The notes under the pieces: model-generated
Told to the model about the DNA's origin: nothing
The model's input: the letters and a program-made list of their open reading frames with translations, nothing else
The model's database searches: none
Shown: positions 35,298 to 64,000 of the stretch, piece after piece
Position numbering within the stretch: position 1 is the stretch's first letter
How the letters are laid out: every line of letters starts with the position of its first letter
Made by a program: the position numbers and the translations under genes
Virus record (IMG/VR): IMGVR_UViG_3300025000_000053
Coordinates: 124,001-188,000 of that record
Length of the DNA: 64,000 nucleotides
Reading direction: 5' to 3' (one strand)

Positions 35298-35963
35298 TTA
35301 TGAAGCTTCATCAATAATTTGTGGAAAAGTAAATCCTTTTATTTCAAGATAAATATATTTTTTCTCTAGAATACTCATATCAGGTTCAATAAGTTCTTTA
35401 GATATTTTAAACTTAGCTTCAAGTAATGATAATAAATCCTTAGATATAAATTTTTCATATTCTTCAATAAAAGATACAAAATTACCAAATAAATTTTGTA
35501 ATGGTATAAATAACTTACCATTATGAACTAATTCATGAACTGTAACACATAGTGGTATTAAACCAACTGTATTTCTATAATGAAGTAGTGTAACCTCTTC
35601 GGCTATTAATAATGGATTAATATCTTTTTCTTCATTAATCCATTTATCTAAAATTATTTGTGTTAAATCAAATAAGGTAAATGGTTCGTGATGAATTTCA
35701 ATAGAAACTCTTTTAGTATCCTTGTTATTAATATTATTAAAAAAAGAACATAAGGTCATATCAATTTCATCTCTTAGATATTGTACATATTGTTTATATT
35801 CCATTGAACTTCGAATTATTCTTTCTATAGTTTTTATAAGTTTAATTTTATCTTTCTCATTCATAATAATAACATTACGAGTTGATGTTGGTAATTCATT
35901 TATTTTTACATATTCAATTTTGTTATTATTTTCATAATTATCAACAACTTTAGGCATTCTCAT
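35298..35963 (-). CDS. His-rich protein (HNH/His-Me-like), paralogue of 27073-27723
   Basis: C...EIHHEPFTLFD...VHELVHNG; late promoter at 35991-36002. Confidence 0.5.
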   Translation of the reverse strand: MRMPKVVDNYENNNKIEYVKINELPTSTRNVIIMNEKDKIKLIKTIERIIRSSMEYKQYVQYLRDEIDMTLCSFFNNINNKDTKRVSIEIHHEPFTLFDLTQIILDKWINEEKDINPLLIAEEVTLLHYRNTVGLIPLCVTVHELVHNGKLFIPLQNLFGNFVSFIEEYEKFISKDLLSLLEAKFKISKELIEPDMSILEKKYIYLEIKGFTFPQIIDEAS

Positions 35964-36031
35964 TTTATCACCCTCATTTCATATTTTCTTTATTTAATTG
36001 TTAGAAAATAGTGAGAGAGTGATAAAAAATA

Positions 36032-49442: not shown

Positions 49443-49491
49443 CCACCATTCATATTTTATTTATATTTTTTCATTATAATAATATATATTT

Positions 49492-50181
49492 TTATTTATT
49501 AATATTTTTTCTACCTATATACATCATTATACCATAATAACCTCCAGTTATTCTTTTTGGTTCCTTCAGATATAAATCATTTAATGCAATAATTTCAAAA
49601 TCATTAAAATAATTTTTCATTTCATTTTTAGTGATAGGTATTTGTTTAAAATTTAAATAATTGATATCATTTTTTGATAATTTATTATCTAATAACATTT
49701 TATTTTTTTGATTAATATTAAATATTGGGTCATTTTCAGAGAGTGTATTAATAAGAACTACTCCATTATAAATTAAACCATTTTTTATATTATTTATAAG
49801 TTTTTTAATATTATTTTTTGATAAATAAGATATTGTCATTGAGCATATAATTAAAGAATATGTGTTTACAGGTATATTAAAAGATGTGATATCTTCTGTT
49901 TTAAATATACATTTAGAATTACAATATTTATTTTTAAGTTCTTCAATTATAACATTAGAAAAATCAACACCTTCAACTGAAAACCCATTTTGTAATAAAA
50001 AATTTACGTTTTTACCAATACCTATTCCTAATTCAAGTGATTTACCTATTGGAATATATTCTAAACATTCTTGTAATAATATATCAGGATTTGGGTTAAA
50101 ATAATGATCTCCAATAGTATAAATATTATTATAGTGGTTTTTAATACTATTTATTTCACTTTCTTCCAATAAAGAAAACAT
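49492..50181 (-). CDS. Class I SAM-dependent methyltransferase (TehB-like)
   Basis: SLELGIGIGKN, GVDFS, EDIT, YSLIIC. Confidence 0.85.
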   Translation of the reverse strand: MFSLLEESEINSIKNHYNNIYTIGDHYFNPNPDILLQECLEYIPIGKSLELGIGIGKNVNFLLQNGFSVEGVDFSNVIIEELKNKYCNSKCIFKTEDITSFNIPVNTYSLIICSMTISYLSKNNIKKLINNIKNGLIYNGVVLINTLSENDPIFNINQKNKMLLDNKLSKNDINYLNFKQIPITKNEMKNYFNDFEIIALNDLYLKEPKRITGGYYGIMMYIGRKNINK

Positions 50182-50408
50182 TTAATAATAAAACCTCCTT
50201 TTATTTAATATTTTTTTCTCTAATTAAAAGTTGTTGAACAAATAATTAATGACTAATTTTATTAAATTTTTCAGGAGGTTACTGATGACAAATGCCTGGA
50301 CATCTGCTCGGTAATAACAAACTTTTGACCTTAATTAATTCTAAAGATAATTTAGAATTTAAGGTTTCTTTTGTTACCACACTCGTAGAGTATTTTTATC
50401 TGTTCACC

Positions 50409-50420
50409 AACATCTTTATA
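50409..50420 (+). promoter_or_regulatory. Putative late promoter AACA-N6-TA (representative copy, upstream of RNAP beta)
   Basis: Also at 2430, 3534, 27016, 50237, 56171 (+) and 10279, 23260, 24242, 29922, 35991, 38536, 45935 (-); matches the AR9 late consensus as I recall it. Confidence 0.7.
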
Positions 50421-50456
50421 ATAAAAAAATTATAAGGAAAGGTTGGTGAACAGATT

Positions 50457-53400
50457 TTGATTTTTATTTCTGATATACCACATTTAAAAACCTATAAGCA
50501 AAAAGTTCTATTACCTAAAGATGAGAAGTATCCTAGTATTAATAGTGTAGTTTTTATTATTAATAATAACATACAATCATCTATAGGACTATTAAACCAT
50601 CAATTTATTAAGAATAATAACATGTATCATTTTTATTTTATGGATCACGTATATAACGGTAAATTATTTAATAGAACTTTTAGAGTTTTATATCGTAATG
50701 AAAGAAATGATATTTATAATAATATAGAAAAAGAAGTTCGATTCATACAAACAGTTCTAGATTTACATTCAGTAAATAAGAAAAATATATATGTTGATTT
50801 AATAAAACATAATAGTTTATTCTTTCAATTAAGTAAAAAAGTTAATTTTACAATTCGTATTAAAAATTATATAGATTATCTAGATAAGTTAATTAATGAT
50901 AGTCATTTTAATCAGTATAAGTATAAAACTATTTGTATTGATATTAATAGTTGGGTTAGTGATTTAAAGACTCAAATAAAAGGTAAATTAAATTTTGATA
51001 ATCCAATATTTATTATTTATTATTGTATGTATAAATACCTTGAAAAATTTAAAGAACTAGGGGATATTAATATTATTTTCTATACTAATGATAGTGTATT
51101 AAGATTAAATCCTTCATTATGTGATAAAAGCTCATATTCTTTATTTAAGAAAGAGATTATCAAAGCGTCTCCTAAAAGTTTATTAGATATGAGTGAAGAT
51201 AATATTGAAAAAGTACTAAAAAGAAAAGATGTTGCTGATAAAATAATAGGATATCTTAATGACCAACATAGATTTGTTGGTGATGATAAAACTGAAGAAG
51301 ATGAAAATTTTGAAACTAGTATTGAAGATAAAGTAGATGAAATAATTGATGCTAATAAGTTAGATAATAATAGTAATGATGAGATGTATAGTGAAGTTTC
51401 AAAAGTTATTATTAATGATGATGAAATTATAAAAAAAATTCATATGATGAATCAAGAGAATAAAGTTGGTAGAAGTACAGCTTCTATTAAAAGGGACGAA
51501 GAATTAAGAAAAAGACAAAAAGAGATAATAAAAGATAAAATAGGAATAGATAATATCTATGAAACTAATAAAGAACAACTAGATATTCCTAAATTTGATG
51601 TTACAGATAAAGTTAATACTACTAATAAAAATGTAACTACTATAAGATATCCTCAATTTGAAAAAGCTTATAATGAAGTTCTTCATGAAAAGGATTTACT
51701 TAATAATATAAAATTTTTAAATGAAAAATCTATTCCAGTTTATATTAGAGGTATAGAACGAGTTGATTCATCCGATGAATTAAATTTAAAAGAAACATAT
51801 ACTTTTGATTTAGAAGATGAAAATAGAGTTAGGCATAAATTAAAATTTGATATCCCTAAATTTATAGATGATAAATTTTTATATCTTGGTGGTAATAAAA
51901 AGATTATTATGAAGCAATTATTTATGAAGCCAGTGGTTAAGACTGGACCAGATGAAGTACAGATTTGTACTAATTACAATAAGATGTTTATTAGACGCTA
52001 TGGTAATAAAATATCATCTAAAATAGAAAAAATGAGAAAATTATTATATGAACAAAAAGAAGGTAAAGGTATTAAAGTTAAATATGGTAATAATTTATCT
52101 ATTAATAACAAATATGATACTACTATAGAATATGATGAATTATCTAAAAGCTTTACTTATATCCGTATAGGTAAAACTGAATTTTATTTTAATCAAGATG
52201 ATGCTACAAATATAGTTAAAGATAAAAAAATAAAACTTAATCAAAATGAATTCTTATTAGGTCTTATTGAAAATGGTAAAAATCCAATACCTATTACAAT
52301 TGATAAAAATACTCAAAAAATAGGCACATCTTTCGATATAGTTGACTATATACTTTCTATGTTGACACAAGGATTAGTGCAAGATTTTGATGATACTAAA
52401 AGTGGTAAGAAATTTGTTTACACTAGAGCTTATATAATGGAAAGACATGTTCCAGTAGTTTTGTTAATTTCATTCTTAGAAGGTTTATCTACAGTAATAA
52501 AAAAAGCTAATATTAAACATTATTTTTCAGATAAAAGACCTAAAGATATTACTCATAATGAGGGAATAATTCAATTTAGTGACGGGTATTTAATATATGA
52601 AAAATATCCATTTGAAAATTCTTTATTAATGAATGCATTTGCAGATATTCCAACTAAAACTTTCGAATATGGTGAATTTGATTCAAAAGATGTTTATTTA
52701 TCTTTATTTGATACTTTATATGGTAATAGGATAATTGGTAATGCCTTTCTTAACTCATATGAATTTTTAATTGATCCTATTACAAGAGAAGTATTAGAAG
52801 ATTTAAACTATCCAACAGATTATGTTTCTTTAGTTTTATATGCTAATTCTTTATTAGCAACTAATTCATATATTAAAGAAAATAATATGAATTTATATAG
52901 AATAAGATCAAATGAACTGGTTAATGCCTTATTATATAAAGAAGTTGCTAATGCTTATATTAAGTATAGAACTACTTCTTTAAATAATAATCCTGTTAAA
53001 ATTTCTGTACCACAAGATGTTATTATTAAAAAGATACTTGTTGCACAGACAGTCGAGGACTACAGCACATTAAATCCTATAACCGAAGTCGAGAAATCCC
53101 GTATGATCAGTCCAAAAGGACATTCAGGAATGAACCTGGATGAAGCGTATACACAAGATAAAAGAGCATATGATAAAACGATGCTTGGTATAATAGCTAT
53201 GTCAACTTCACCGGATTCATCGTGTGGAGTAACAAGACAACTTACATTAGAACCCAATATAAAAAATCCGAGGGGATATATCGATATAAATGACGATAGA
53301 TTAGAAATTTTAAAAGATGCAAATCTATTTTCTCCAGCTGAATTATTATCTCCTCTCGGAAATACAAGGGATGAACTTGCTATTGTCCCACTATGTAGAA

Positions 53401-56093
53401 ATATATAGTTAAAAACTCTTCTAATTGTCGGGGACATCCTTAACGCTCTTATTACCAAACTAATATAGTAATATATTAGTGGTGAAGGGTAATGCCTTAG
53501 GTATGGTAACAAGATAAGAGATTGGGTTATCCGCAGCTAAGATTCCTATAAATTTTATAGGAATAAAGTTCAAAGACTATCGAAAGCATGTTTATTATTG
53601 ATATAAAATATAATAAACAGAAGTGAGTAGAGTAGGGAAACCGAAACGGAGAGCATCTGAACACATAATGGTGAAGATGATGATATAGTCTGTCACTTAT
53701 GGAAATCATAGGTGGTTCCTGGATAGCATAAGAACAGCGATAAATAAAACTTGTCGCATTATCTAGTAATAGATAAATAAAAAATCTCCTTAATTGTCGG
53801 GAAATCTCTTAGAGCCTAAAACTACTAAGTTATATTAGTAATAATATAATGGCTTAGTCTAATCAACTAAGGTATAGTAATAAGGTTTTAGGATTGAGTA
53901 ATCCGCAGCTAAGATTCTAATATATTAGAATAAAGTTCAACGACTATCGAAGGCAAACTTATTATAGAAATAAAAATATAATGAGTTTGTTAGTAGAGTA
54001 GGGCTCAAGTGAGTTCTGAAATGGGAGACTCCTTATTATTTAATAATAAGGATGAAGATATAGTCTTATATCCTAAGGAAACTTAGGGAAGTTCATAAAA
54101 GAACTGCATAGATTAACGATCTATGTGAAATAAATGGAGTGTAAAACAATCGAAACATATCGTACCTGTAGTTAAACAATCACCAGTTTTATTATCTAAT
54201 GGAGTTGAACAAGTTATTCAATATCACTTATCTGATGATTTTTCAGTTGTAGCTAAAGATGATGGTGAAGTTGTTGAGATAGATAGTGAAACTGGTTTAA
54301 TTATTATTAAATATAAAAATGGTGAAACTAAAGTAATTGATACAAGTCCAAAAGTTGTAAAAAATGGTAAACTAAATGCCCACTTATATGGTGACATATA
54401 TGTGAATCTTCTTTAATTGTCGGGGAAACTCTTAGAACTTTTTATTATATAATAAAAAGATTGAGTAATCCGCAGCCAAGTCTCATAGTAAAAAAAATAA
54501 AGTTCATGAAGAACTCTATTACAAAGATATTGGAAAATTTTATAAAAAATCAAATACTCCATGGTATTTTATTGTATAACAAAGTTGATGATGAGTTGAT
54601 CTGAGTTCTTTTTTAATAATTTTAAAATCTATATCTATCAAATATTTCTCTAATAAGGGAAGTGTTTCTTCAATGAATATATTAAAAAGTTCTAAGTTCT
54701 TTTTAGCTATGAAAAAGTCACTAATTTTTTTGATATCATTATTATATCTTTTTAGTTCATTTTCATACCTCTGGGTAAAGAATTTTTTAGTTAATTCTAT
54801 CGATATAGGATTACAAAACTCATCACTTAACTCATTAATATTCCTCATTATAATATCTTTGTAATTAATTTCTCCTTGCTTCATTTTATTTATCATTCCT
54901 TTCTTTTTTATATTACGTAAATAATATATAAATGAAAAATAATGAAATACTATGAGAAAGGTTCAACGACTATCCCTTTGGCTTTGAAATAAGCAATAGG
55001 AGTAGGGCTCAAGTGAGTGGGTGAGAATCCCTTAAATCGAAATAGGAAGCATCCTTATGAGATGAAGATATAGTCTAGTATCTTATCGAAAGATAAGGAA
55101 GTTCATAAGAGAACTGCATAGATTAACGACCTATGTGAATATATATCGGCTGGTGGTTTCTTCTTATCAAATAAATTAACATGTAATTTGAAAGTAGGGC
55201 AAAAAATAAAAAAACGAGATATATTAGCTTATGACAGTAACTTTTTTAGTAATAGTAAATTATATGGTAATAGATTCAATATTGGTTCATTACAGAAAAT
55301 AGCGTGTATGTCCTCATACTCAACATATGAGGATTCTACTTTTGTCACTAAGAAATTATGTGAAGATATGGCAACTGAGATTGTTATGGAAAAACCAGTT
55401 GTCTTAGGTAAAAATGCTAATGTTGATTATATTGTTGAAATAGGTCAAAATGTTAGTGTTGGTGATGAACTAATTAGATTTGAAGTTTCTTTTAAAGATG
55501 AATCACTAAATAAATTTCTTTCAAATATTGGAGATGAATTAAAAGAAGAAATTAAAGCAATGGGTAAAACACCTATTAAAACTAAATACTCTGGTGTAAT
55601 TGAAGACATTAAAGTATATTCAACTGTAGATGTAGAAGAACTATCTCCAACATTAAAAAAAATTGTTAATAATTATTATGATAGAATTAATAAGAAGAAA
55701 AAAATTATTAATAAATATAATAAAAGTGATTCTGTATATAAATGTGGTATAATGTTAAATGAACCTGTAACTAAGATTGAAACTAAAGATGGTAAAGTTA
55801 AAAGTCATACTGTTAATTCAGGAGTTTTAATTATATTTTATATTAAATATAAAGATACAGTTGGTGTTGGTGATAAGATATGTTTCTTTACTGCTTTGAA
55901 ATCTATTGTCGGTGAAGTTATCCCTGAAGGATATGAACCATATTCTTTATTTAGACCAGATGAGAAGATTTCTTCAGTGGTTGCTCCAGGAGCAGTAATG
56001 AATAGAATGACCCCTTCTGTTATTCTATCAATGTTCGGTAATAAAGTATTGATAGAATTAAAACGAAAATTAAAAGATATTTATGATGAATAA
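50457..56093 (+). CDS. Phage RNA polymerase beta part, spliced from 4 exons (50457-53372, 53722-53741, 54137-54368, 55149-56093; ~1370 aa); probably the virion RNAP
   Basis: KGHSGMN, STSPDSSCGVTRQL, junctions NTRD|DSIRTAM|SVKQSKHIVP and VVKNG|AGGFFL, VGDK, NRMTPS; lacks the extreme beta C-terminus; late promoter at 50409-50420. Confidence 0.9.
53373..53721 (+). mobile_element. Group I intron 1 of RNAP beta (349 nt, no ORF)
   Basis: P1 GGGAU|GA:UUGUCCC; P10 GAUAGCA:UGCUAUU; AAUUGUCGGG, AUCCGCAGC, GUUCAAAGACUA, GAUAUAGUC; ends in G. Confidence 0.9.
53722..53741 (+). other. 20-nt micro-exon GATAGCATAAGAACAGCGAT
   Basis: Bounded by the terminal G of intron 1 and the P1 of intron 2; encodes DSIRTA plus AT of the Met codon. 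Confidence 0.85.
53742..54136 (+). mobile_element. Group I intron 2 of RNAP beta (395 nt, no ORF)
   Basis: P1 GCGAU|A:UGUCGC; AAUUGUCGGG, AAUCCGCAGC, GUUCAACGACUA, GAUAUAGUC; ends ...AAAUG. Confidence 0.9.
54369..55148 (+). mobile_element. Group I intron 3 of RNAP beta (780 nt) carrying an antisense ORF in the P6 loop
   Basis: P1 GGU|A:UGCC; same core motifs; stem TCTCATAGTA (54481-54490) : TACTATGAGA (54948-54957) encloses a ~460-nt insert; ends ...AUAUCG. Confidence 0.88.
54540..54896 (-). CDS. Orphan ORF antisense within intron 3
   Basis: 118 aa (114 aa from the second ATG); RBS-like AAGGA; early-type promoter at 54921-54930; no LAGLIDADG, GIY-YIG or HNH motif visible. Confidence 0.65.
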   Translation of the reverse strand: MINKMKQGEINYKDIIMRNINELSDEFCNPISIELTKKFFTQRYENELKRYNNDIKKISDFFIAKKNLELFNIFIEETLPLLEKYLIDIDFKIIKKELRSTHHQLCYTIKYHGVFDFL

Positions 56094-56101
56094 ATAAAAT
56101 T

Positions 56102-56139
56102 AATAATATCAATAGAGAAAATTCTCTATTGATATTATT
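56102..56139 (+). terminator. Terminator after RNAP beta
   Basis: 18-bp stem AATAATATCAATAGAGAA / TTCTCTATTGATATTATT followed by a T-tract. Confidence 0.75.
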
Positions 56140-56220: not shown

Positions 56221-59200
56221 TTGGATATAAAAAATAAAACTAAAATTAAGACTAAGTCACCCACAGCATTAAATTGGTTTAAAAATGTTGGAAAATCTTT
56301 AGGTTATACTACAACTGAATTAATTGAAGAAATGATTCCTGCTCCAATAGAATTTATTAAAAGTAATACTCAAACATTTAAAAATTTTTATGATGAATTA
56401 CGTAAAAATAAATCAATAAATAAAAAATTGTCGGATCAAATGATAAAGAATGAATATATCAATATAGGTCAAACAGCAATAAAAAATGCTTTAAAAGATA
56501 TTAAATCAGGTAAGATTTATAACAAAGATAGACAAGATGAAATATTTAATGATGATATTGATTTTGAATTTGGTGATGATATAAATTTTGATAATGAAGA
56601 TTATAAAGTTTCATCAGATACAACATCTGAATCAAGTACAAGTAGTTCTTCACCTACTATCAACAGAGTGAATATTACTTCTAATATCAATAGAAATAAT
56701 CCTATGGTTAGAGCTGTAGAAAGACAAACTGAAGCTATATATAATACAACTCAAGCTAGTGATAAAATATCAATATCTTTAGCTACTAATCATATGATGA
56801 TAAATAGAAAAGTAGGGGAAGATATAAATACAGGTTTAAGTGCTATAAATGATAATTTAAGTTTACTTGTTAATTTTCAAAGTGAATCAATGACTAAATA
56901 TATAGGTACTACATTTAAATACTATGAAGAAAGTTTGAATGTATTTAACAATATTCATGAGCAAATGAAAAAAGGTACTATTACTGTAGATGATAAGACA
57001 GGTAAAGAAAAATTTGATCCTATGGAATCAGTTTTTCTTTCTAGAGGTGGGTTAAATCTATCAGGTTATGCTAATTTAATTAAAAAACAGTTTGGTACAG
57101 CTGTAGACCAAGATATGATTTTATCTCAATTAAAATATATGTTATCAGATAAAGACCAATTAAAATTTTTAGCTGCTTCACCTATAAGTTTTTTATCTAC
57201 TAAGATAGTAACTGCATTTATTCCGTCTATGTTAAAACAAACATTAACTAGTATGAATAAAAGTTTTGAAAATTTCTTCCCAGCTTTATTAATGAAAGCT
57301 AATAGAATGGTTGGTTCTCAAAATCCAATACTTAATTTCTTAGGTCAAGTTTTTGGTATAAATGTAAAACAGAAATCATCTGTTGATTTATCTCAATATA
57401 ATAAAGGTAAAACTGCTTTTGATGGTTATACAAAGAAAGCTATAACAGAAGTAATACCAGGATATTTAAGAAAGATTTTAGCTGCATTAAATGGTAAAGA
57501 AGAAGTTGCTTTTGATTATGATAATGGTGTTTTTAAATCTATGGATTCTATGAATAAAGATTTTCAAAGTACTGTTAATAGAAGTATATTAAGTAGTTTT
57601 TCTGATGTTATGAATGAAATAAAAGACAAAGCAAATGCTTTTAATATTCAAAATGATGAGGAACGAAAGAAATTTAATAAAGACTTAGAAAGTTTTTTCT
57701 TAAAACTTCCTAGTTTAAATAAATTAATAAATCCTATAAGAACTAAAGATAATGATGGTAATAGTATAAATGAATTAAAAACTGTACATGATTTTGGTAG
57801 TGAAGAAATGAATAATTTCTTTAGACAATTAGTACTATCACTTGATAAAGGTGATATTCAGAAAATGTTTGGTACAGATGTATTAAATGCTAGAAAAAAT
57901 AAAGAAAAAATATATAATGATGCTGAACTTAATCCATTAAGATATAACGCAGCTTTAATTAATAATCAATTAAATTTTGATGATCATATTAAGAGAAATA
58001 AATATAATAAAAGTCAATTTGAAGTAAAAAAAGGTTTTGGAGTTTTATCTAAAACCGATCAATTTAATAAAATTGATTTGGACTATTTACGTGATATTAA
58101 AGAAATTTTATTAAGAGGTATTAAAGTATTCCCTGTAACTCAGATAATTAATCCAGATGGTTCAATATCTCAACCAAGTTTTGAATATCATGATACACAA
58201 TTAAGAAGAATGAGAAGTCAGGAAAGAGAAAGAGATAGAAAATTTAAAGTAAAACCCCAACAAGATACTGAAATTACACCTGAATTAGAAAGGATTAATA
58301 GACAGCAGGGTAAAAGAATAGTTAATAGATTATCAGATTCAGATATAACTCCTGAAGAAATGAGAGAACAAATTAGAGTATTTGATGAACAAAGAAGAAG
58401 TGATTCAGAAAGAGATAGAAGACAACAAAGTGGTTGGTTAGGAAGTTTTATATCTGGGGATATGCAAACTAAATATAATTTATTAAGAGAAAAAGTAAGA
58501 GATATCTTTAATACACCTGCTAAATTACTTAATACTGTATTTAAAAAAATAGATGAAACTATGTTTAAAATAGTCTTTGGTGATGATGACAAAGGTAATT
58601 CTTCTTTTCTTAATAGAACATGGTCTTTAATGCAAAGTAATTTTCAAAAAATGTCTGAATGGTTTAAAGATAAAATATTTAATCCTATTAGAGAATCTTT
58701 ATTTGGACCAAATGGTTTTATAACTAAATTAAAGAATTCTGAATTATTTACAAAAATTAAATCTAATTTTAGTAAATTAACAGATTTTTTATTTGGACTA
58801 AAAGATTCTACTGGTAAAAGAAAAGGTGGGATGTTTTCTGATACATCTAACCATCTTTTAGATATATTTGATAGTGCTAAATACTATTTTACAGGTAAAG
58901 CTTATATAAATAGATCAGGATTATCTTTTCCTACTAATAATAAAAGTGTATTTGGTGAACTAAAATCAATGTTTTCAGGTTTTAAAGATACTATAAAATC
59001 TTATTTATTTGGTAGAAGGAATCAAGATGGGAATATACAAGAAACAGGTATTCTTTCAACAGCTATTAATAGTATAAAGGATGGTTTTCAAAACTTTTCA
59101 AATGCTATTTTTGGTCCACAGAAAATTGGTGGTAAGGATAATAAAAATTATGTAATAGTTAGTGATTTATTTAAGAAGTTTAAAGAAAGATTACCTAAAT

Positions 59201-62200
59201 CATTATCTTTTGGTATTATCGGAGCTGGTAGTGGGTTATTAATGGGTGGTAAGTTAGGTTTATTAGGTTCATTATTTCTTCCTGGTGGTCCTATTGGTGG
59301 AGCTATTGTTGGTACCACAGTTGGTTTCTTATCTCAATCAGATAGATTTAAAGATTGGTTATTTGGTTCTAAAGATATTAATAATAATCGTATTGGTGGT
59401 TTTATTAATAAGAAAACTCAAGAGTTCTTTAAAAAAAATAAAGTTGGTATCGTTGGTGGTGCCAGTTTAGGAGCTCTTAAATCTATATTAGGATTTGGAT
59501 TATTACCCTCGTTCTTTTTACCTGGTGGTCCTATTGGTGGTGCATTATTTGGTGCCGGTTTATCAATGTTAGTTAGTTCAGAGAAATTTAAGAAATTTAT
59601 GTTTGGGGATTTACAAGCAGACGGAAATAGAATTGGTGGAATAGCTCAAAAAATATTTGGTAAAGTTGATAGAAATAAAGCTAAAAAGATGTTTGGTAAT
59701 GTTAGTGCTGGTATAATAGGTGGAGCTGGTATAGGATTCGTAACTAGTAAATTTGGTTTATTAGGTGCCGCTTTATTACCAGGTGGTCCTTTAGGTGGAG
59801 CCTTATTAGGTGCCGCCGCCGGTATTGCTCTATCTTCTGAAAAATGGAAGAAGTTAGTATTTGGTGAATTTGATGATGAAACTCAATTAAGAAAAGGTGG
59901 TTTATTAGGTAAAGTTATTAATTGGACTAATTTAGAAATTCTTCAACCTATTAAAATTAAATTACAAGAAATAAATTTAAATGTTAAAGAATGGTTTACA
60001 AGAAGTATTGCTAACCCATTTCTTAATGCAATTGATCCAATTAAACATGAAATAAAATTAATGATACGTAGTTTAAAAGATAATTTTGTAGAAGGTTGGA
60101 CTAGTTTTAAAGTTTTTATTGGTAATGTATTTGAAAAACATGTAGGTGCACCTTTTGGTAAATTTATGGAAGATAGAGTTATGAAACCATTAAGAGGATT
60201 TATATCAAAAATATTAGGTGGGATTGGTAGAATTGTTGGTAGTATTGTATCAGCACCATTTAAAGGTATGGAAGGTTTATCAAGAGGATTAAATAGAAAA
60301 CATATGCAAGCTGGTTTAGATGCATATGTTGAAGAAGGTTGGAGTGATTTATTAGATTTTAAAGGTAGAAGACAACGTGGAGAAAAAATAGGTTTCTTTG
60401 GTGGATTAAAGAAATTTAAAGATATTTATTTTAATAGAGAAGCTAGAGAGGACGCTAAAAATAGTAGTAAAGGTGCTCCATATTCTAAGCAATTAGAAAT
60501 TGATAGACAAAAACGTGAAGAAGAGGCTAATACTAAATTTTCCAATGAAAGAGAAAACATAAGAAAAATGTGGAGTTCTTGGAGAGATAGAAAAAGAGCT
60601 GGTGCTGATAATAATTATGATAATTTTAGTCCTGATGGTAAAGTTGTTAAAAACCAGTATTACCCTCCAGATGAACAAAGAGTAGATAGAAATTCACCTA
60701 ATCCAATTAATGATGTTACAGATGATATAACTAGAAGAACTGGTAGGAAAGGAAGAAGAGGTAAACCTAATCCTAAACCTGTAAATGATCAAAGTGTAAT
60801 TATATTACCTGGTTCAGTTCAACAAGATGACACATCAACGATTGTTGATGATGTTACAGATGTTATCTATAGAAGAACTGGAAATAGATCAAATAGTAGA
60901 AGAGGAAAAAAATCAACAACATCCCCACAACCTATTATTAATCAAAATGAACAACAATCTGAAGAGTCATCACAACCAATTATTAATCAAAATCAACCAC
61001 CTAGTAAAAAACCATCTACTACAAGAATTAAATCATCTAATGAATTATTACTACAGATAGCTACTGATGTAAGAACTATTGCTAAAGAAGTTAATGGTCA
61101 ATTAGATGGTGTTGGTGGTAATGTTTATAAAATAAGAAAATTAATTCAATCACAACAAGGTATATCAGATGAAGATTTAAGTGGTGAATCGAATAGAGAT
61201 AGGATTGGATTCTTTGGTAAAATAAGAAGAATGTTATATAGACCAATAGATACTATTAAAGAGAAAGTATTAGGTTCTATTAAATTTGTAACTGATAAAA
61301 TTACTTCTGTAGGTAAAACAATATTTGATTTTAGTAAAACAATATTGGTTACTATACCTAAACAAATATTTTCAACTATGTACAATATAGGTTCTGAAAT
61401 ATTATCAATCGGAAAAGAAACTTTTCTTAATATAATTAAATTACCTGGTCAATTATTGAATTTATTTGCTCAAACCACAAAAATATTTGCTGAATCAATT
61501 AAAATGATATCACCTGCTATTGGGGAAACTCTTAAAGGTGTTGCCAAATTATTCTCAGGTACAATGGGAATGATCGCTGAATCAATGATAGGTGTTGGTA
61601 AAGGTATTGGTCAAGTTGCTTTTAGTATTGGTGAGGCTATTGGCTCAATAATATCTACTTTTAGTAAAGGTTTGATGAGTGTAGTTCCAGTAGTAGGTAA
61701 ATTTTTATTGACATCTAGTAAGATGATTATGGATTTCGGATTTGGTATAATTAAGAATGTTGGTGGTTTATTAACAAGTATTACTAAATCTTTATTTAGT
61801 ATAGCAACATCACCAATTAGATTTGCAGCGGATATGCTTGGTAGAGCTGTAGGTATTAAGAGATCTGAAATGTATATTACAGGTGGTGTTATTGATGTAG
61901 TTAGAAGGATTGGTGATAATACCTCTGACTTTACACAAAAACCAAAAGATGATAATAGAAGTAATATATTTGATAATTCAGATAATGTTGTTATGCCAGT
62001 AAGAGTAGATGGTGTTACTTCAGTTAGAATTGTTGGTTCGGATAGACCAATTCCTATTTATTTTAATATGAATATGAATCAAAATCAACGTAGAAGTAAT
62101 TCATTTAATAATAATATATCAGGATTGCCTAATTCAATTAATACGGGAAATAATAATTATTTAGTTTCTTCATTAACGAATGCACTTGATATATTTGATA

Positions 62201-64000
62201 CAGAAAATGATAAAGAAGAAGAAAATAAACGAATAGAAAAAGAAAGAGAAAAAGAATTATATCAAAACCAACTCGAAGTTTCTAAAAAAACATCAGGGTT
62301 CTTAATAGCTCAAAATAATTTAAGAAATGAAAAAGATTTTACTAGAAATAATGAAATAAGACAGACATCATTATTGCAACAAATTGCAAATATATCAAAA
62401 AATCAACATGAAAGTTGGTTATCACTATTTGGTAAGAAAGGTATTTTAACAGTTGCCTTTTTATTAACACTACCATATTTAGAAAAAATATTTAAATGGA
62501 TTAAGGGATTTTTTGGTGGTGATGATGATACTGGTATTGGAGGTGGTATATCTACTGTTGTTAAAAAGGCATTAGGTTTAATAGAAAAAAACGATGGTAG
62601 TCGTAAAGATGCTGAAGATAAAGATATTATAAATGCTCAGGGTAGAGAAAGTTATATTAAAGGTACCGCTGTTTTAGCAAGAAGATATAGTCCTAAGTTA
62701 GTAAAAGCAATAGAAAAAGGTAAAGATAAAATAGCGAATTCTAATATTGTAAAAAATGTTACTAGATATGGTTCAAATTTAAAAAATGCTTTTAATCCAT
62801 CAAGTACTGTCAGAGGTGGAACTATTGATGCATCTTTCAAGGTTACTGATGATACTGGTAAAATAATTAAAGAAGTTACTGTAAATGATTCAAATAAAAT
62901 TATTCAAGCTATTAAGAATACTTTTGAGAGATTTTTTAATAATTCATTTGTTAAGAAACTATTAGGTTCATCTGCTGGTAAAATAGCTAGTAAAATAATA
63001 AATGAAGTTACTAAAGTATTAAATTATAAGACTATGTTTAATAATATGGCTAAATTATCAAAGGCTTTTTTAAGAACAGGTGTTATTATGTTTGCTGCCC
63101 CTGTAATAATATCTTGGGATTTAGCTACAGGTGCCTATGAAGCATCAAGAATATTTAAAGTTGCAAATGAATCTGTTGATGGTAAAATGCAAATAGCTTC
63201 TTCTGTAACTAAAGCATTAATAGGATTCTTCCCAGTAATTGATATTTTATCAGAAATATTTAATGAGCAGACTGGTATGAGTTTAAAACAATATGTTGCA
63301 ACAACTATTTATTCAATGTTAGCATCAACAGAAGAAATTAAAAAATTAGAAGTAGATAAAAAAGCTTTTGAGCAAGATAAAAATGAGTATAATGAAAAAA
63401 ATAAAACTAAACTATCATTAAATGCATATAATGATATGAAAAATAAAACGTTCTTCCAGAAATTTATTAGTAATCCCTTATCAAAAACTAAAGATTTTAT
63501 TGTGAAAACAGGAAGCAGTATCAGTAATAGTCTATCTGAAAATTGGGATAATTTTAAAGGTGGTTTTAGTAAAGGTTTTAAAATGATGGGTGATGATGTT
63601 TCTAATGCAATGTCTAAAACACCTGAAATGATTAAAACATTTAAGGATACATTATCTAAAAATTGGAAAGAACTAAAAGATAATAGCGAAAAACAATGGA
63701 ATAATATGAAAGGCTTTGTTTCTAAATCTTTAAAGGATACTAATAATACGTTGGGTATATTATTTGGATATAAAGATGAAGAAGGAAATGATGTTAGTTT
63801 TACAGAAGGATTTAATAAAGGATTTAAAGGACTTATAAAAAGCATTAGAGATAGTTGGAAAGATATTGGTGATGGTGCTAAATTTTATTGGGATAATACA
63901 AAAGCATTCACAGAAAGAAAATGGAAAGAATTAAGTGAGAAATTACCAAAGGCATTTGAAAGTTTAGATAACTGGTTAGGTGAACTATTAGGATTTAAAG
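56221..64000 (+). CDS. Giant virion protein (tape-measure/tail-associated-like), >2590 aa, 3'-truncated by the window edge; absent from the ORF track
   Basis: RBS AAAGGGG and TTG at 56221 (MDIKNKTKIKTKSPTALNWF). Frame open wherever spot-checked, through to 64000. Helical composition, Gly-rich LPGGP(I/L)GGA repeats, late promoter at 56171-56182. Confidence 0.75.
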   Translation, partial: MDIKNKTKIKTKSPTALNWFKNVGKSLGYTTTELIEEMIPAPIEFIKSNTQTFKNFYDELRKNKSINKKLSDQMIKNEYINIGQTAIKNALKDIKSGKIYNKDRQDEIFNDDIDFEFGDDINFDNEDYKVSSDTTSESSTSSSSPTINRVNITSNINRNNPMVRAVERQTEAIYNTTQASDKISISLATNHMMINRKVGEDINTGLSAINDNLSLLVNFQSESMTKYIGTTFKYYEESLNVFNNIHEQMKKGTITVDDKTGKEKFDPMESVFLSRGGLNLSGYANLIKKQFGTAVDQDMILSQLKYMLSDKDQLKFLAASPISFLSTKIVTAFIPSMLKQTLTSMNKSFENFFPALLMKANRMVGSQNPILNFLGQVFGINVKQKSSVDLSQYNKGKTAFDGYTKKAITEVIPGYLRKILAALNGKEEVAFDYDNGVFKSMDSMNKDFQSTVNRSILSSFSDVMNEIKDKANAFNIQNDEERKKFNKDLESFFLKLPSLNKLINPIRTKDNDGNSINELKTVHDFGSEEMNNFFRQLVLSLDKGDIQKMFGTDVLNARKNKEKIYNDAELNPLRYNAALINNQLNFDDHIKRNKYNKSQFEVKKGFGVLSKTDQFNKIDLDYLRDIKEILLRGIKVFPVTQIINPDGSISQPSFEYHDTQLRRMRSQERERDRKFKVKPQQDTEITPELERINRQQGKRIVNRLSDSDITPEEMREQIRVFDEQRRSDSERDRRQQSGWLGSFISGDMQTKYNLLREKVRDIFNTPAKLLNTVFKKIDETMFKIVFGDDDKGNSSFLNRTWSLMQSNFQKMSEWFKDKIFNPIRESLFGPNGFITKLKNSELFTKIKSNFSKLTDFLFGLKDSTGKRKGGMFSDTSNHLLDIFDSAKYYFTGKAYINRSGLSFPTNNKSVFGELKSMFSGFKDTIKSYLFGRRNQDGNIQETGILSTAINSIKDGFQNFSNAIFGPQKIGGKDNKNYVIVSDLFKKFKERLPKSLSFGIIGAGSGLLMGGKLGLLGSLFLPGGPIGGAIVGTTVGFLSQSDRFKDWLFGSKDINNNRIGGFINKKTQEFFKKNKVGIVGGASLGALKSILGFGLLPSFFLPGGPIGGALFGAGLSMLVSSEKFKKFMFGDLQADGNRIGGIAQKIFGKVDRNKAKKMFGNVSAGIIGGAGIGFVTSKFGLLGAALLPGGPLGGALLGAAAGIALSSEKWKKLVFGEFDDETQLRKGGLLGKVINWTNLEILQPIKIKLQEINLNVKEWFTRSIANPFLNAIDPIKHEIKLMIRSLKDNFVEGWTSFKVFIGNVFEKHVGAPFGKFMEDRVMKPLRGFISKILGGIGRIVGSIVSAPFKGMEGLSRGLNRKHMQAGLDAYVEEGWSDLLDFKGRRQRGEKIGFFGGLKKFKDIYFNREAREDAKNSSKGAPYSKQLEIDRQKREEEANTKFSNERENIRKMWSSWRDRKRAGADNNYDNFSPDGKVVKNQYYPPDEQRVDRNSPNPINDVTDDITRRTGRKGRRGKPNPKPVNDQSVIILPGSVQQDDTSTIVDDVTDVIYRRTGNRSNSRRGKKSTTSPQPIINQNEQQSEESSQPIINQNQPPSKKPSTTRIKSSNELLLQIATDVRTIAKEVNGQLDGVGGNVYKIRKLIQSQQGISDEDLSGESNRDRIGFFGKIRRMLYRPIDTIKEKVLGSIKFVTDKITSVGKTIFDFSKTILVTIPKQIFSTMYNIGSEILSIGKETFLNIIKLPGQLLNLFAQTTKIFAESIKMISPAIGETLKGVAKLFSGTMGMIAESMIGVGKGIGQVAFSIGEAIGSIISTFSKGLMSVVPVVGKFLLTSSKMIMDFGFGIIKNVGGLLTSITKSLFSIATSPIRFAADMLGRAVGIKRSEMYITGGVIDVVRRIGDNTSDFTQKPKDDNRSNIFDNSDNVVMPVRVDGVTSVRIVGSDRPIPIYFNMNMNQNQRRSNSFNNNISGLPNSINTGNNNYLVSSLTNALDIFDTENDKEEENKRIEKEREKELYQNQLEVSKKTSGFLIAQNNLRNEKDFTRNNEIRQTSLLQQIANISKNQHESWLSLFGKKGILTVAFLLTLPYLEKIFKWIKGFFGGDDDTGIGGGISTVVKKALGLIEKNDGSRKDAEDKDIINAQGRESYIKGTAVLARRYSPKLVKAIEKGKDKIANSNIVKNVTRYGSNLKNAFNPSSTVRGGTIDASFKVTDDTGKIIKEVTVNDSNKIIQAIKNTFERFFNNSFVKKLLGSSAGKIASKIINEVTKVLNYKTMFNNMAKLSKAFLRTGVIMFAAPVIISWDLATGAYEASRIFKVANESVDGKMQIASSVTKALIGFFPVIDILSEIFNEQTGMSLKQYVATTIYSMLASTEEIKKLEVDKKAFEQDKNEYNEKNKTKLSLNAYNDMKNKTFFQKFISNPLSKTKDFIVKTGSSISNSLSENWDNFKGGFSKGFKMMGDDVSNAMSKTPEMIKTFKDTLSKNWKELKDNSEKQWNNMKGFVSKSLKDTNNTLGILFGYKDEEGNDVSFTEGFNKGFKGLIKSIRDSWKDIGDGAKFYWDNTKAFTERKWKELSEKLPKAFESLDNWLGELLGFK

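What the first reader, a model, noticed from the sequence alone, without database searches (positions are those of the whole stretch)
50398..50459. RBS-sequestering hairpin bypassed by an internal late promoter at RNAP beta
Seen: ATCTGTTCACCAAC (50398-50411) is the perfect complement of GTTGGTGAACAGAT (50442-50455), which covers the RBS region just before TTG 50457. The late motif AACA-TCTTTA-TA starts inside the left arm, so a transcript from ~50420 lacks that arm. Established: T4 uses this logic for late-only translation (e.g. gene e, I-TevI). Inference: read-through transcripts are translationally silent and only the internal promoter yields protein.
Basis: partly seen in the sequence, partly recalled or inferred. 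Interest (0 to 1): 0.65.

Follow-up and report, generated by a model that had tools for sequence, protein, structure and literature searches.

The report
Promoter nested in terminator-like RBS hairpin
A conserved RNA hairpin just before a jumbo phage's virion RNA polymerase beta gene hides the ribosome site and looks like a terminator for an upstream small RNA, while the gene's own promoter sits inside the hairpin and so escapes it; this resembles a phage T4 trick but does not appear to work as an early/late switch.

Summary
The inverted repeat is real and larger than reported. A perfect 14-bp outer stem (50398-50411 / 50442-50455) encloses a 10-bp inner stem. The fold has dG -32 kcal/mol (z = -7) and is the most stable gene leader of 279 in this 250-kb, 24.5% GC phage.

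The right arm holds the Shine-Dalgarno GGTGA and ends 1 nt before TTG 50457, the start of the virion RNAP beta gene. The AACA-N6-TAA motif is a genuine positional signal in this genome (44 of 115 copies lie 15-45 nt before ORF starts, 2 expected). It puts +1 at A50420, inside the hairpin.

Fourteen related metagenomic phages keep the same layout with different, compensating arm sequences, so an RNA structure is under selection.

The T4-style "late-only translation" reading is not supported. No early-type promoter lies upstream on this strand. The only upstream promoter (P1, +1 about 50248) is of the same late type. It is conserved in 13/13 loci and drives a conserved structured RNA absent from Rfam.

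The hairpin is followed by a T-run, like this phage's many terminators, and relatives show intermediate forms.

Best reading: it is the terminator and RBS mask of the P1 RNA, bypassed by the nested promoter P2. No transcript data exist.

The parts
50237..50248 (+). P1: upstream AR9-type late promoter motif (AACA-N6-TAA), predicted +1 at A50248
   Evidence: AACA-N6-TAATG is conserved in 13/13 related loci, 15-45 nt before the invariant CAGGAGG. The motif class is validated genome-wide.
50248..50397 (+). P1 RNA body: a conserved structured RNA. It holds the invariant CAGGAGG (50272-50278); a start-like ATG at 50285 with a 9-codon ORF to 50314; helix 1 (50278-50285 / 50308-50315); a middle hairpin (50329-50364); and a small hairpin (50381-50391).
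   Evidence: Helix 1 is 97% paired, with 7 of 8 pairs changed on both sides. ORF length and frame are not conserved (5-41 codons). There is no Rfam match. It is single-copy in the genome.
50398..50411 (+). Outer 5' arm of the hairpin (anti-SD arm)
   Evidence: It covaries with the 3' arm in 14 phages.
50409..50420 (+). P2: nested late promoter motif AACA-TCTTTA-TA, predicted +1 at A50420
   Evidence: It is present at -24 to about -70 nt before the beta gene in all relatives examined that begin at the gene start.
50413..50438 (+). Inner stem-loop (10 bp, 6-nt loop). P2 transcripts lack most of its 5' half.
   Evidence: Inner stems are present in relatives with different sequences.
50442..50455 (+). 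Outer 3' arm, containing SD GGTGA (50445-50449)
50455..50470 (+). T-rich tract directly after the stem. It overlaps the start codon TTG 50457 and codons 2-5.
   Evidence: There are 9 T in the 12 nt after the stem. The tract is T-richer in hairpin-bearing phages than in hairpin-less relatives.
50457..53375 (+). Exon 1 of the virion RNAP beta subunit gene (start TTG)

Best explanation
The inverted repeat encodes an RNA hairpin that can form only in transcripts begun upstream, at a second conserved AR9-type promoter (P1, +1 about 50248). P1 drives a conserved structured RNA of about 200 nt.

The composite 24-bp hairpin plus the T-run after it acts as that RNA's intrinsic terminator. In any molecules that read through, it also buries the Shine-Dalgarno sequence and abuts the start codon of the virion RNAP beta gene.

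The beta mRNA itself starts at promoter P2 (+1 about A50420), nested inside the hairpin. It therefore lacks both 5' arms, cannot fold, is neither terminated nor masked, and carries an open 37-nt leader.

Shown: the structure, its covariation, the motif statistics, the conservation of P1 and P2, and the lack of an early promoter. Inferred: that both promoters fire, that termination occurs, and that translation is blocked.
For: Structure:
- The hairpin is exceptional: z = -7 and the top of 279 leaders.
- In 14 phages (40-88% amino-acid identity), 156 of 165 outer-stem cells pair. 9 of 12 pairs show changes on both sides. Slid controls pair at 31-49%, and 0 of 5000 shuffles match.
- L035 has entirely rewritten arms.
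- G.U wobbles occur only in the + sense (L022, L008, L174, inner stems). That points to + strand RNA.

Promoters:
- AACA-N6-TAA: 44 of 115 copies lie 15-45 nt before ORF starts, against 2.0 expected and 2 antisense.
- Homologues of the AR9 promoter-specificity subunit gp226 are present in this genome.
- AR9's vRNAP subunit genes are late genes (PMC5312081).
- P1 is conserved in 13/13 loci.

Terminator reading:
- This genome has about 96 long intergenic hairpins after gene ends with T-rich tails.
- The hairpin's tail has 9 T in 12 nt.
- Hairpin-bearing phages have 8-11 T in the first 15 nt of the gene, against 3-7 in hairpin-less relatives.
- L011 has the P1 RNA, then a canonical terminator with T8, then P2.
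- L175 has a terminator-like hairpin with a T-run that encloses P2 and leaves the SD outside it.

Masking:
- Full leaders fold at -18 to -34 kcal/mol, against 0 to -6 from the P2 start.
Against: - There are no transcript data. The phage comes from a groundwater metagenome and no RNA runs hold it.
- The T-run overlaps codons 1-5, so protein constraint and shared ancestry could explain part of the T-richness.
- L010 has a separate terminator-like hairpin upstream and a weak T-run, yet keeps the SD-covering hairpin. That favours masking as the conserved role.
- A second hairpin of this design in the same genome (35963-36027, - strand) has no T-run.
- It is unknown whether these non-canonical phage RNAPs obey intrinsic terminators.
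- The covariation alignment was fitted to the structure by a covariance model.
- The sequences fall into only about five independent arm types.
Confidence: 0.55

Rival explanations
1. One reading: a T4 gene e-type temporal switch. Early read-through transcripts are translationally silent, and only the late internal promoter gives protein.
For: The anatomy matches T4 e/soc/49/I-TevI: the SD sits in a helix and the late promoter's start lies within it. A virion RNAP made too early could plausibly be harmful.
Against: No early-type promoter lies on the + strand within 6.4 kb upstream. The best PWM scores are 10.8 and 8.4, against a median of 19.3 for real sites. All upstream genes are on the - strand. 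The conserved upstream promoter P1 is of the same late class.
Confidence: 0.08
2. Pure translational masking, possibly regulated. P1 transcripts read through into the beta gene but are silent unless the conserved P1 leader (invariant SD-like element, start codon, helices) changes fold in response to a ligand, a protein or leader translation. P2 would give the unregulated share.
For: In all 14 phages the 3' arm covers the SD and reaches the start codon, including the rewritten L035. L010 keeps the hairpin despite a separate upstream terminator-like hairpin. A second SD-covering hairpin without a T-run exists in the same genome and in L044. The P1 RNA is strongly structured and conserved.
Against: I found no conserved alternative pairing that would free the SD. 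The mini-ORF ends at very different distances from the hairpin. A constitutive P2 inside the hairpin would blunt any such regulation. L175 and L011 do not mask the SD.
Confidence: 0.22
3. RNase III-type processing site. The roughly 24-bp composite helix is cut in P1 transcripts. This would leave a 3' hairpin stub on the P1 RNA and free the beta RBS.
For: Total helix length (11-14 bp plus 9-11 bp, with a small internal loop) is conserved and is about two helical turns.
Against: There is no specific evidence. Many terminator hairpins in this genome are equally long. The host and its RNases are unknown.
Confidence: 0.07
4. A DNA-level element: a cruciform that presents the template-strand promoter to the nvRNAP, or a palindromic operator for a dimeric protein.
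For: The AR9 nvRNAP reads the template strand and can start on single-stranded DNA (PMC7598289). In the second case (35990-36002) the loop is exactly the promoter.
Against: Complementarity is conserved, not sequence. G.U pairs occur only in the + sense. Here the promoter is partly paired, not looped out. Only 2 of 51 late promoters have such repeats. The long spacer disfavours extrusion.
Confidence: 0.04

Closest known systems
Phage T4 gene e (lysozyme), soc, 49 and I-TevI leaders: an RBS-sequestering hairpin bypassed by late promoters
   Same: An RNA helix holds the SD or start codon. A late promoter lies in the region that encodes the 5' strand, so late transcripts lack that strand and are open (PMC3014915).
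   Different: In T4 the long transcripts come from early or middle promoters, which gives a temporal switch. Here the only upstream promoter is of the same late class and drives its own conserved RNA. The hairpin also carries a T-run like a terminator. The promoter type and polymerase (AR9-like nvRNAP, template-strand recognition) are unrelated to T4 gp55 promoters.
AR9 late promoters (AACA-N6-T-A/G, read by nvRNAP with gp226)
   Same: The same motif, the same short distance to gene starts, the same gene class (vRNAP subunits are late in AR9), and a gp226 homologue is present.
   Different: In AR9 the beta gene has a separate upstream terminator followed by the promoter, with no bridging hairpin. 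Here +2 is also A in 44 of 51 sites. Uracil-containing DNA cannot be assessed.
Intrinsic (hairpin plus U-tract) terminators
   Same: A stable stem followed at once by a T-run, at the end of a transcription unit, matching about 96 similar elements in this genome.
   Different: The 'loop' holds a promoter and an inner hairpin. The 3' arm is the next gene's SD, and the T-run is that gene's first codons.
T4-type PeSL cassettes (stem-loop plus early promoter); from my own knowledge, not checked here
   Same: A terminator-like stem-loop is coupled to a promoter in one compact intergenic module.
   Different: In PeSL the promoter follows the stem-loop. Here it is nested inside. The element is single-copy in this genome and is not a repeated mobile cassette.

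Membership tests
T4 gene e-type hairpin bypass | An RNA helix includes the SD and/or the start codon | tested here: met
   GGTGA lies in the 3' arm, and the stem ends 1 nt before TTG.
T4 gene e-type hairpin bypass | A late promoter whose start lies within the helix, so late RNA lacks the 5' strand | tested here: met
   Met by motif only. +1 is predicted at A50420 and was not mapped experimentally.
T4 gene e-type hairpin bypass | Longer transcripts from upstream early or middle promoters that carry the full helix earlier in infection | tested here: not met
   No early-type promoter lies on the + strand within 6.4 kb. The upstream promoter P1 is late-type.
T4 gene e-type hairpin bypass | Measured translational repression of the long transcript | not testable with these tools
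   The phage is uncultured and no RNA runs hold it.
AR9-type late promoter | AACA-N6-T-A/G with +1 at the A/G, a short distance before genes | tested here: met
   (p about 1e-46).
AR9-type late promoter | The genome encodes an nvRNAP with a gp226-like specificity subunit | tested here: met
   (E = 1e-17, 27% identity over residues 15-439).
AR9-type late promoter | Uracil in place of thymine in the template strand | not testable with these tools
   Sequence data do not report base modification.
Intrinsic terminator | A stable stem-loop followed directly by a U-rich tract | tested here: met
Intrinsic terminator | Lies at the 3' end of a transcription unit | tested here: inconclusive
   This is true only if P1 fires. 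P1 and its RNA are conserved but no 3' ends have been mapped.
Rfam families | A match at or above the gathering score | tested here: not met
   Only group I introns were found elsewhere in the window.

The most novel reading that the evidence does not exclude
The P1 RNA together with the hairpin forms a new class of cis-regulatory leader in AR9-like jumbo phages. A conserved sensor domain (invariant SD-like CAGGAGG, a start codon held in a covarying helix, conserved loops) would decide whether P1 transcripts stop or stay masked at the hairpin, or instead go on to make virion RNAP beta. This would tune how much virion polymerase is made on top of a basal supply from P2.
Probability: 0.15. Interest if true: 0.8.

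Novelty: new variant of a known kind. Interest (0 to 1): 0.6.

Why it matters
Jumbo phages of the AR9/PBS1 kind run their own non-canonical RNA polymerases, and almost nothing is known about how their transcripts end or how translation is controlled.

This locus gives a conserved, testable module. A minimal template-strand promoter sits nested inside a terminator-like hairpin whose 3' arm is the next gene's ribosome site.

If confirmed, it would show three things:
- these polymerases respond to hairpin-plus-U signals;
- promoter position alone can select between a terminated or masked RNA and an open mRNA;
- the T4 gene e design has arisen independently with an unrelated transcription machinery.

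It also reveals an unnamed, well-supported structured RNA that always precedes the virion RNAP beta gene in a family of uncultured phages.

Tried and rejected
- Megablast of the locus against the phage collection found no match.
- Rfam scans of the leader in the window and seven relatives found nothing relevant.
- A tRNA/tmRNA scan found none.
- A search for RNA sequencing runs found only four DNA runs from one groundwater study.
- MAFFT alone misaligned the 3' arms of the window's clade. I therefore used a covariance model of the outer stem and counted pairs on the + strand rows in a script.
- A degenerate DNA pattern for the P1 RNA 5' domain in viral contigs was too unspecific.
- Reading the mini-ORF (50285-50314) as a conserved peptide was rejected. 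Its length runs from 5 to 41 codons and its frame shifts among relatives, while the nucleotide blocks and the helix are kept.
- A repeated mobile promoter/terminator cassette was rejected. The model hits only this site in the genome.
- I looked for a conserved anti-sequestor pairing that could free the hairpin's 5' arm and found none by inspection.
- The weak AT-only hairpins around P2 in L014 and L018 (-7 to -9 kcal/mol) equal the genome average and were not counted.
No genetic code other than table 11 was needed.

Full report
**What the window is.** The window is bases 124001-188000 of a 249,853-bp, 24.5% GC virus record from a groundwater metagenome.

The 983-codon ORF at 50457 is the virion RNA polymerase (vRNAP) beta subunit.
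- PHROG 'RNA polymerase beta subunit' matches at E = 7e-95 from residue 5.
- The best named relatives are Listeria phage LPJP1, the Staphylococcus jumbo phages, and AR9/PBS1. In AR9 the hit is the intron-split 'virion RNAP subunit'.
- Upstream genes, including a methyltransferase at 49492-50181, are all on the other strand. So 50182-50456 is a divergent intergenic region.

**The observation.**
- Folding shows a further 10-bp inner stem (50413-50422 / 50429-50438). Total dG is -32.3 kcal/mol and z = -7.06 against shuffles.
- This is the most stable of the 279 gene leaders in the genome (-29.8, against a mean of -8.4 and sd 5.0).
- The 3' arm contains GGTGA, which other genes in this genome also use as an SD. 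It lies 7 nt before TTG, and the arm ends 1 nt before TTG.

**The promoter.**
- In AR9, late promoters are AACA-(6N)-T-A/G with +1 at the last base. They are read on the template strand by the non-virion RNAP with subunit gp226. Early promoters are AAATATATATTAT-(6N)-G (PMC7598289 and PMC5312081).
- Both motif classes exist in this genome.
- Late class, AACA-N6-TAA: 115 copies on both strands. In 44 of them the predicted +1 lies 15-45 nt before a same-strand ORF start (2.0 expected, p about 1e-46). Only 2 lie antisense in the same windows.
- Early class, TATATATTAT: 57 exact copies, nearly all 25-100 nt before same-strand genes.
- The genome encodes gp226 homologues.
- In AR9 all vRNAP subunit genes are late.
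- The site in the finding (AACA at 50409-50412) fits the consensus. It puts +1 at A50420, 37 nt before TTG, inside the modal distance class.
- RNA from that start lacks the outer 5' arm and most of the inner 5' arm. It folds at -0.7 kcal/mol.

**Conservation.** I fetched relatives through protein searches.
- Fourteen distinct phages keep the layout: 5' arm, AACA-N6-TA, inner hairpin, then a 3' arm carrying the SD up to the start codon. Their beta proteins are 81-88% identical to the window's over the full ORF in the closest relatives, and about 40% (N-terminal 420 aa) to 59% (full ORF) in the others.
- The arm sequences differ and compensate.
 - The closest relative changes T:A to C:G at the second pair.
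 - Other lineages use arms of the TTTCGATCACC, TTTCGTTCACC or ATCCGATCACC types, each with a matching partner.
 - L035 has completely rewritten arms.
- On a covariance-model alignment of the 14 sequences, 156 of 165 outer-stem cells pair. Nine of 12 pairs show changes on both sides. Sliding the partner by 1-3 columns gives 31-49% pairing. No shuffle out of 5000 reaches the observed value.
- Caveats: the alignment was fitted to the structure, and the sequences fall into about five arm types.
- G.U pairs occur only in the + sense, which points to + strand RNA.
- Relatives that lack this hairpin still keep the promoter motif 24-70 nt before the start: L011, L013, L014, L018 and L024 (26-36% identity over the N-terminal 420 aa) and L175 (48% over the full ORF).

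**Where would hairpin-containing transcripts come from?**
- They would not come from an early promoter. The best early-type PWM scores on the + strand within 6.4 kb upstream are 10.8 and 8.4, against a median of 19.3 for real sites. The 8.4 site is not conserved in the closest relative.
- Instead a second late-type motif, AACA-N6-TAATG (50237-50248, +1 at 50248), is conserved in 13 of 13 loci.
- P1 is followed by a conserved RNA with these features:
 - an invariant CAGGAGG, then 6 nt, then ATG or GTG and AC;
 - a helix that encloses that start codon (97% paired, 7 of 8 pairs changed on both sides);
 - a second covarying hairpin;
 - a small ACUC-GUA-GAGU hairpin.
- The short ORF from that start has 5 to 41 codons and shifts frame between relatives. 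The conservation is therefore at the RNA level.
- Rfam has no match, and the element is single-copy.

**Terminator or RBS mask?**
- This genome has about 96 long (12-25 bp) intergenic hairpins just after gene ends, with T-rich tails (mean 6.5 T in 12 nt, against 4.5 for hairpins in coding sequence). This pattern is what I call the phage's own terminator grammar.
- The hairpin here is followed by 9 T in 12 nt.
- In hairpin-bearing phages the first 15 nt of the gene hold 8-11 T (TTT at codon 3 in most). In hairpin-less relatives they hold 3-7 T.
- Relatives show a graded series:
 - L011 has the P1 RNA, a canonical terminator with T8, then P2, SD and ATG, all separate.
 - L175 has a terminator-like hairpin plus T-run that encloses P2, with the SD and ATG after the T-run.
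 - The window's clade has the same arrangement compacted, so the 3' arm is the SD and the T-run is the first codons.
- This favours bypass of termination as the older function.
- Some evidence points the other way. L010 has a separate upstream terminator-like hairpin and a weak T-run, yet keeps the SD-covering hairpin.
- A second hairpin of the same design exists in this genome before gene 35298-35963. Its loop is exactly the promoter, its 3' arm is the SD, and it has no T-run. L044 conserves it. In L045 and L046 a hairpin encloses the promoter but ends before the SD.
- I therefore take the element as doing both jobs for P1 transcripts, with P2 escaping both.

**Comparison with known systems.** The anatomy is that of T4 genes e, soc, 49 and I-TevI. 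The defining early-versus-late source of long transcripts was tested and not met. AR9 itself has terminator, promoter and SD in series, without a bridge. The closest description is a new variant of the T4-type hairpin bypass, combined with a terminator, in a lineage with an unrelated polymerase and promoter type.

**Limits.** No transcript ends, termination or translation were measured. The promoters are inferred from motif statistics, conservation and homology with AR9. The T-run overlaps coding sequence. The function of the P1 RNA is unknown.

Noticed in passing
window 53368-53713 and 53732-54088 (+); 54369-55148: The vRNAP beta gene is split. Two tandem group I introns match Rfam RF00028 (61 and 60 bits). 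Exons found by tblastn with an unsplit relative are 50457-53375, 54138-54368 and 55149-56093, plus a possible 18-nt micro-exon between the introns. The third gap has no Rfam hit. It holds a - strand ORF (54540-54896) with an exact early-type promoter at 54921. This parallels AR9, where an early gene sits inside an intron of the late gene g189.
   Followed up: partly
window 35963-36027 (- strand): A second hairpin of the same design (dG -21.6). The 5' arm is an anti-SD. The loop is exactly AACA-ATTAAA-TAA (36002-35990). The 3' arm is the SD up to the ATG of gene 35298-35963 (PHROG 12252, function unknown). No T-run follows. It is kept in the closest relative (L044). In L045 and L046 a hairpin encloses the promoter but ends before the SD.
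   Followed up: partly
window 50248-50397 (+), and L005-L036, L011, L018, L175: An unnamed conserved structured RNA always lies upstream of the vRNAP beta gene. It has an invariant CAGGAGG, 6 nt, ATG or GTG, then AC, inside a covarying helix. In most relatives it also has a hairpin with a GUAAGGC or GUACGGC loop followed by UUGAGGG. It has no Rfam match and its function is unknown.
   Followed up: partly
whole genome; window examples at 49479(-), 54921(-), 47581(-), 45268(-): An early-promoter-like motif, TATATATTAT, occurs 57 times exactly, almost always 25-100 nt before same-strand genes, with G enriched about 7 nt after it. It is nearly identical to the AR9 early consensus.
   Followed up: yes
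window 50224-50248: The + strand P1 motif (AACA at 50237) and a - strand late-like motif with a 5-nt rather than 6-nt spacer (AACA at 50235, before the methyltransferase gene) overlap back to back in a near-palindrome, TTGTTGAACAA.
   Followed up: no
window 56102-56139 and 56221-63999: A perfect 17-bp AT-rich palindrome with T-runs on both strands follows the last beta exon. After it come a late motif 39 nt before an ORF and then that ORF, which is more than 2,593 codons long and runs off the window. The ORF has no Pfam hit and only an unknown-function PHROG match.
   Followed up: partly
G000:C1 7867-9234(-) and 235214-236548(-); also about 16.6 kb and 244.8 kb: There are two gp226-like genes, and near-identical promoter regions lie near both ends of the contig. 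This suggests diverged long terminal repeats, paralogous blocks or an assembly effect.
   Followed up: no
L010 1067-1125: Relative L010 has a second hairpin upstream of the main one. It resembles the main hairpin in inverted orientation (the model scores 30-35 bits on both strands). It carries an AACA-N6-TG motif on the opposite strand and is followed by TGTTTTT on the + strand.
   Followed up: no
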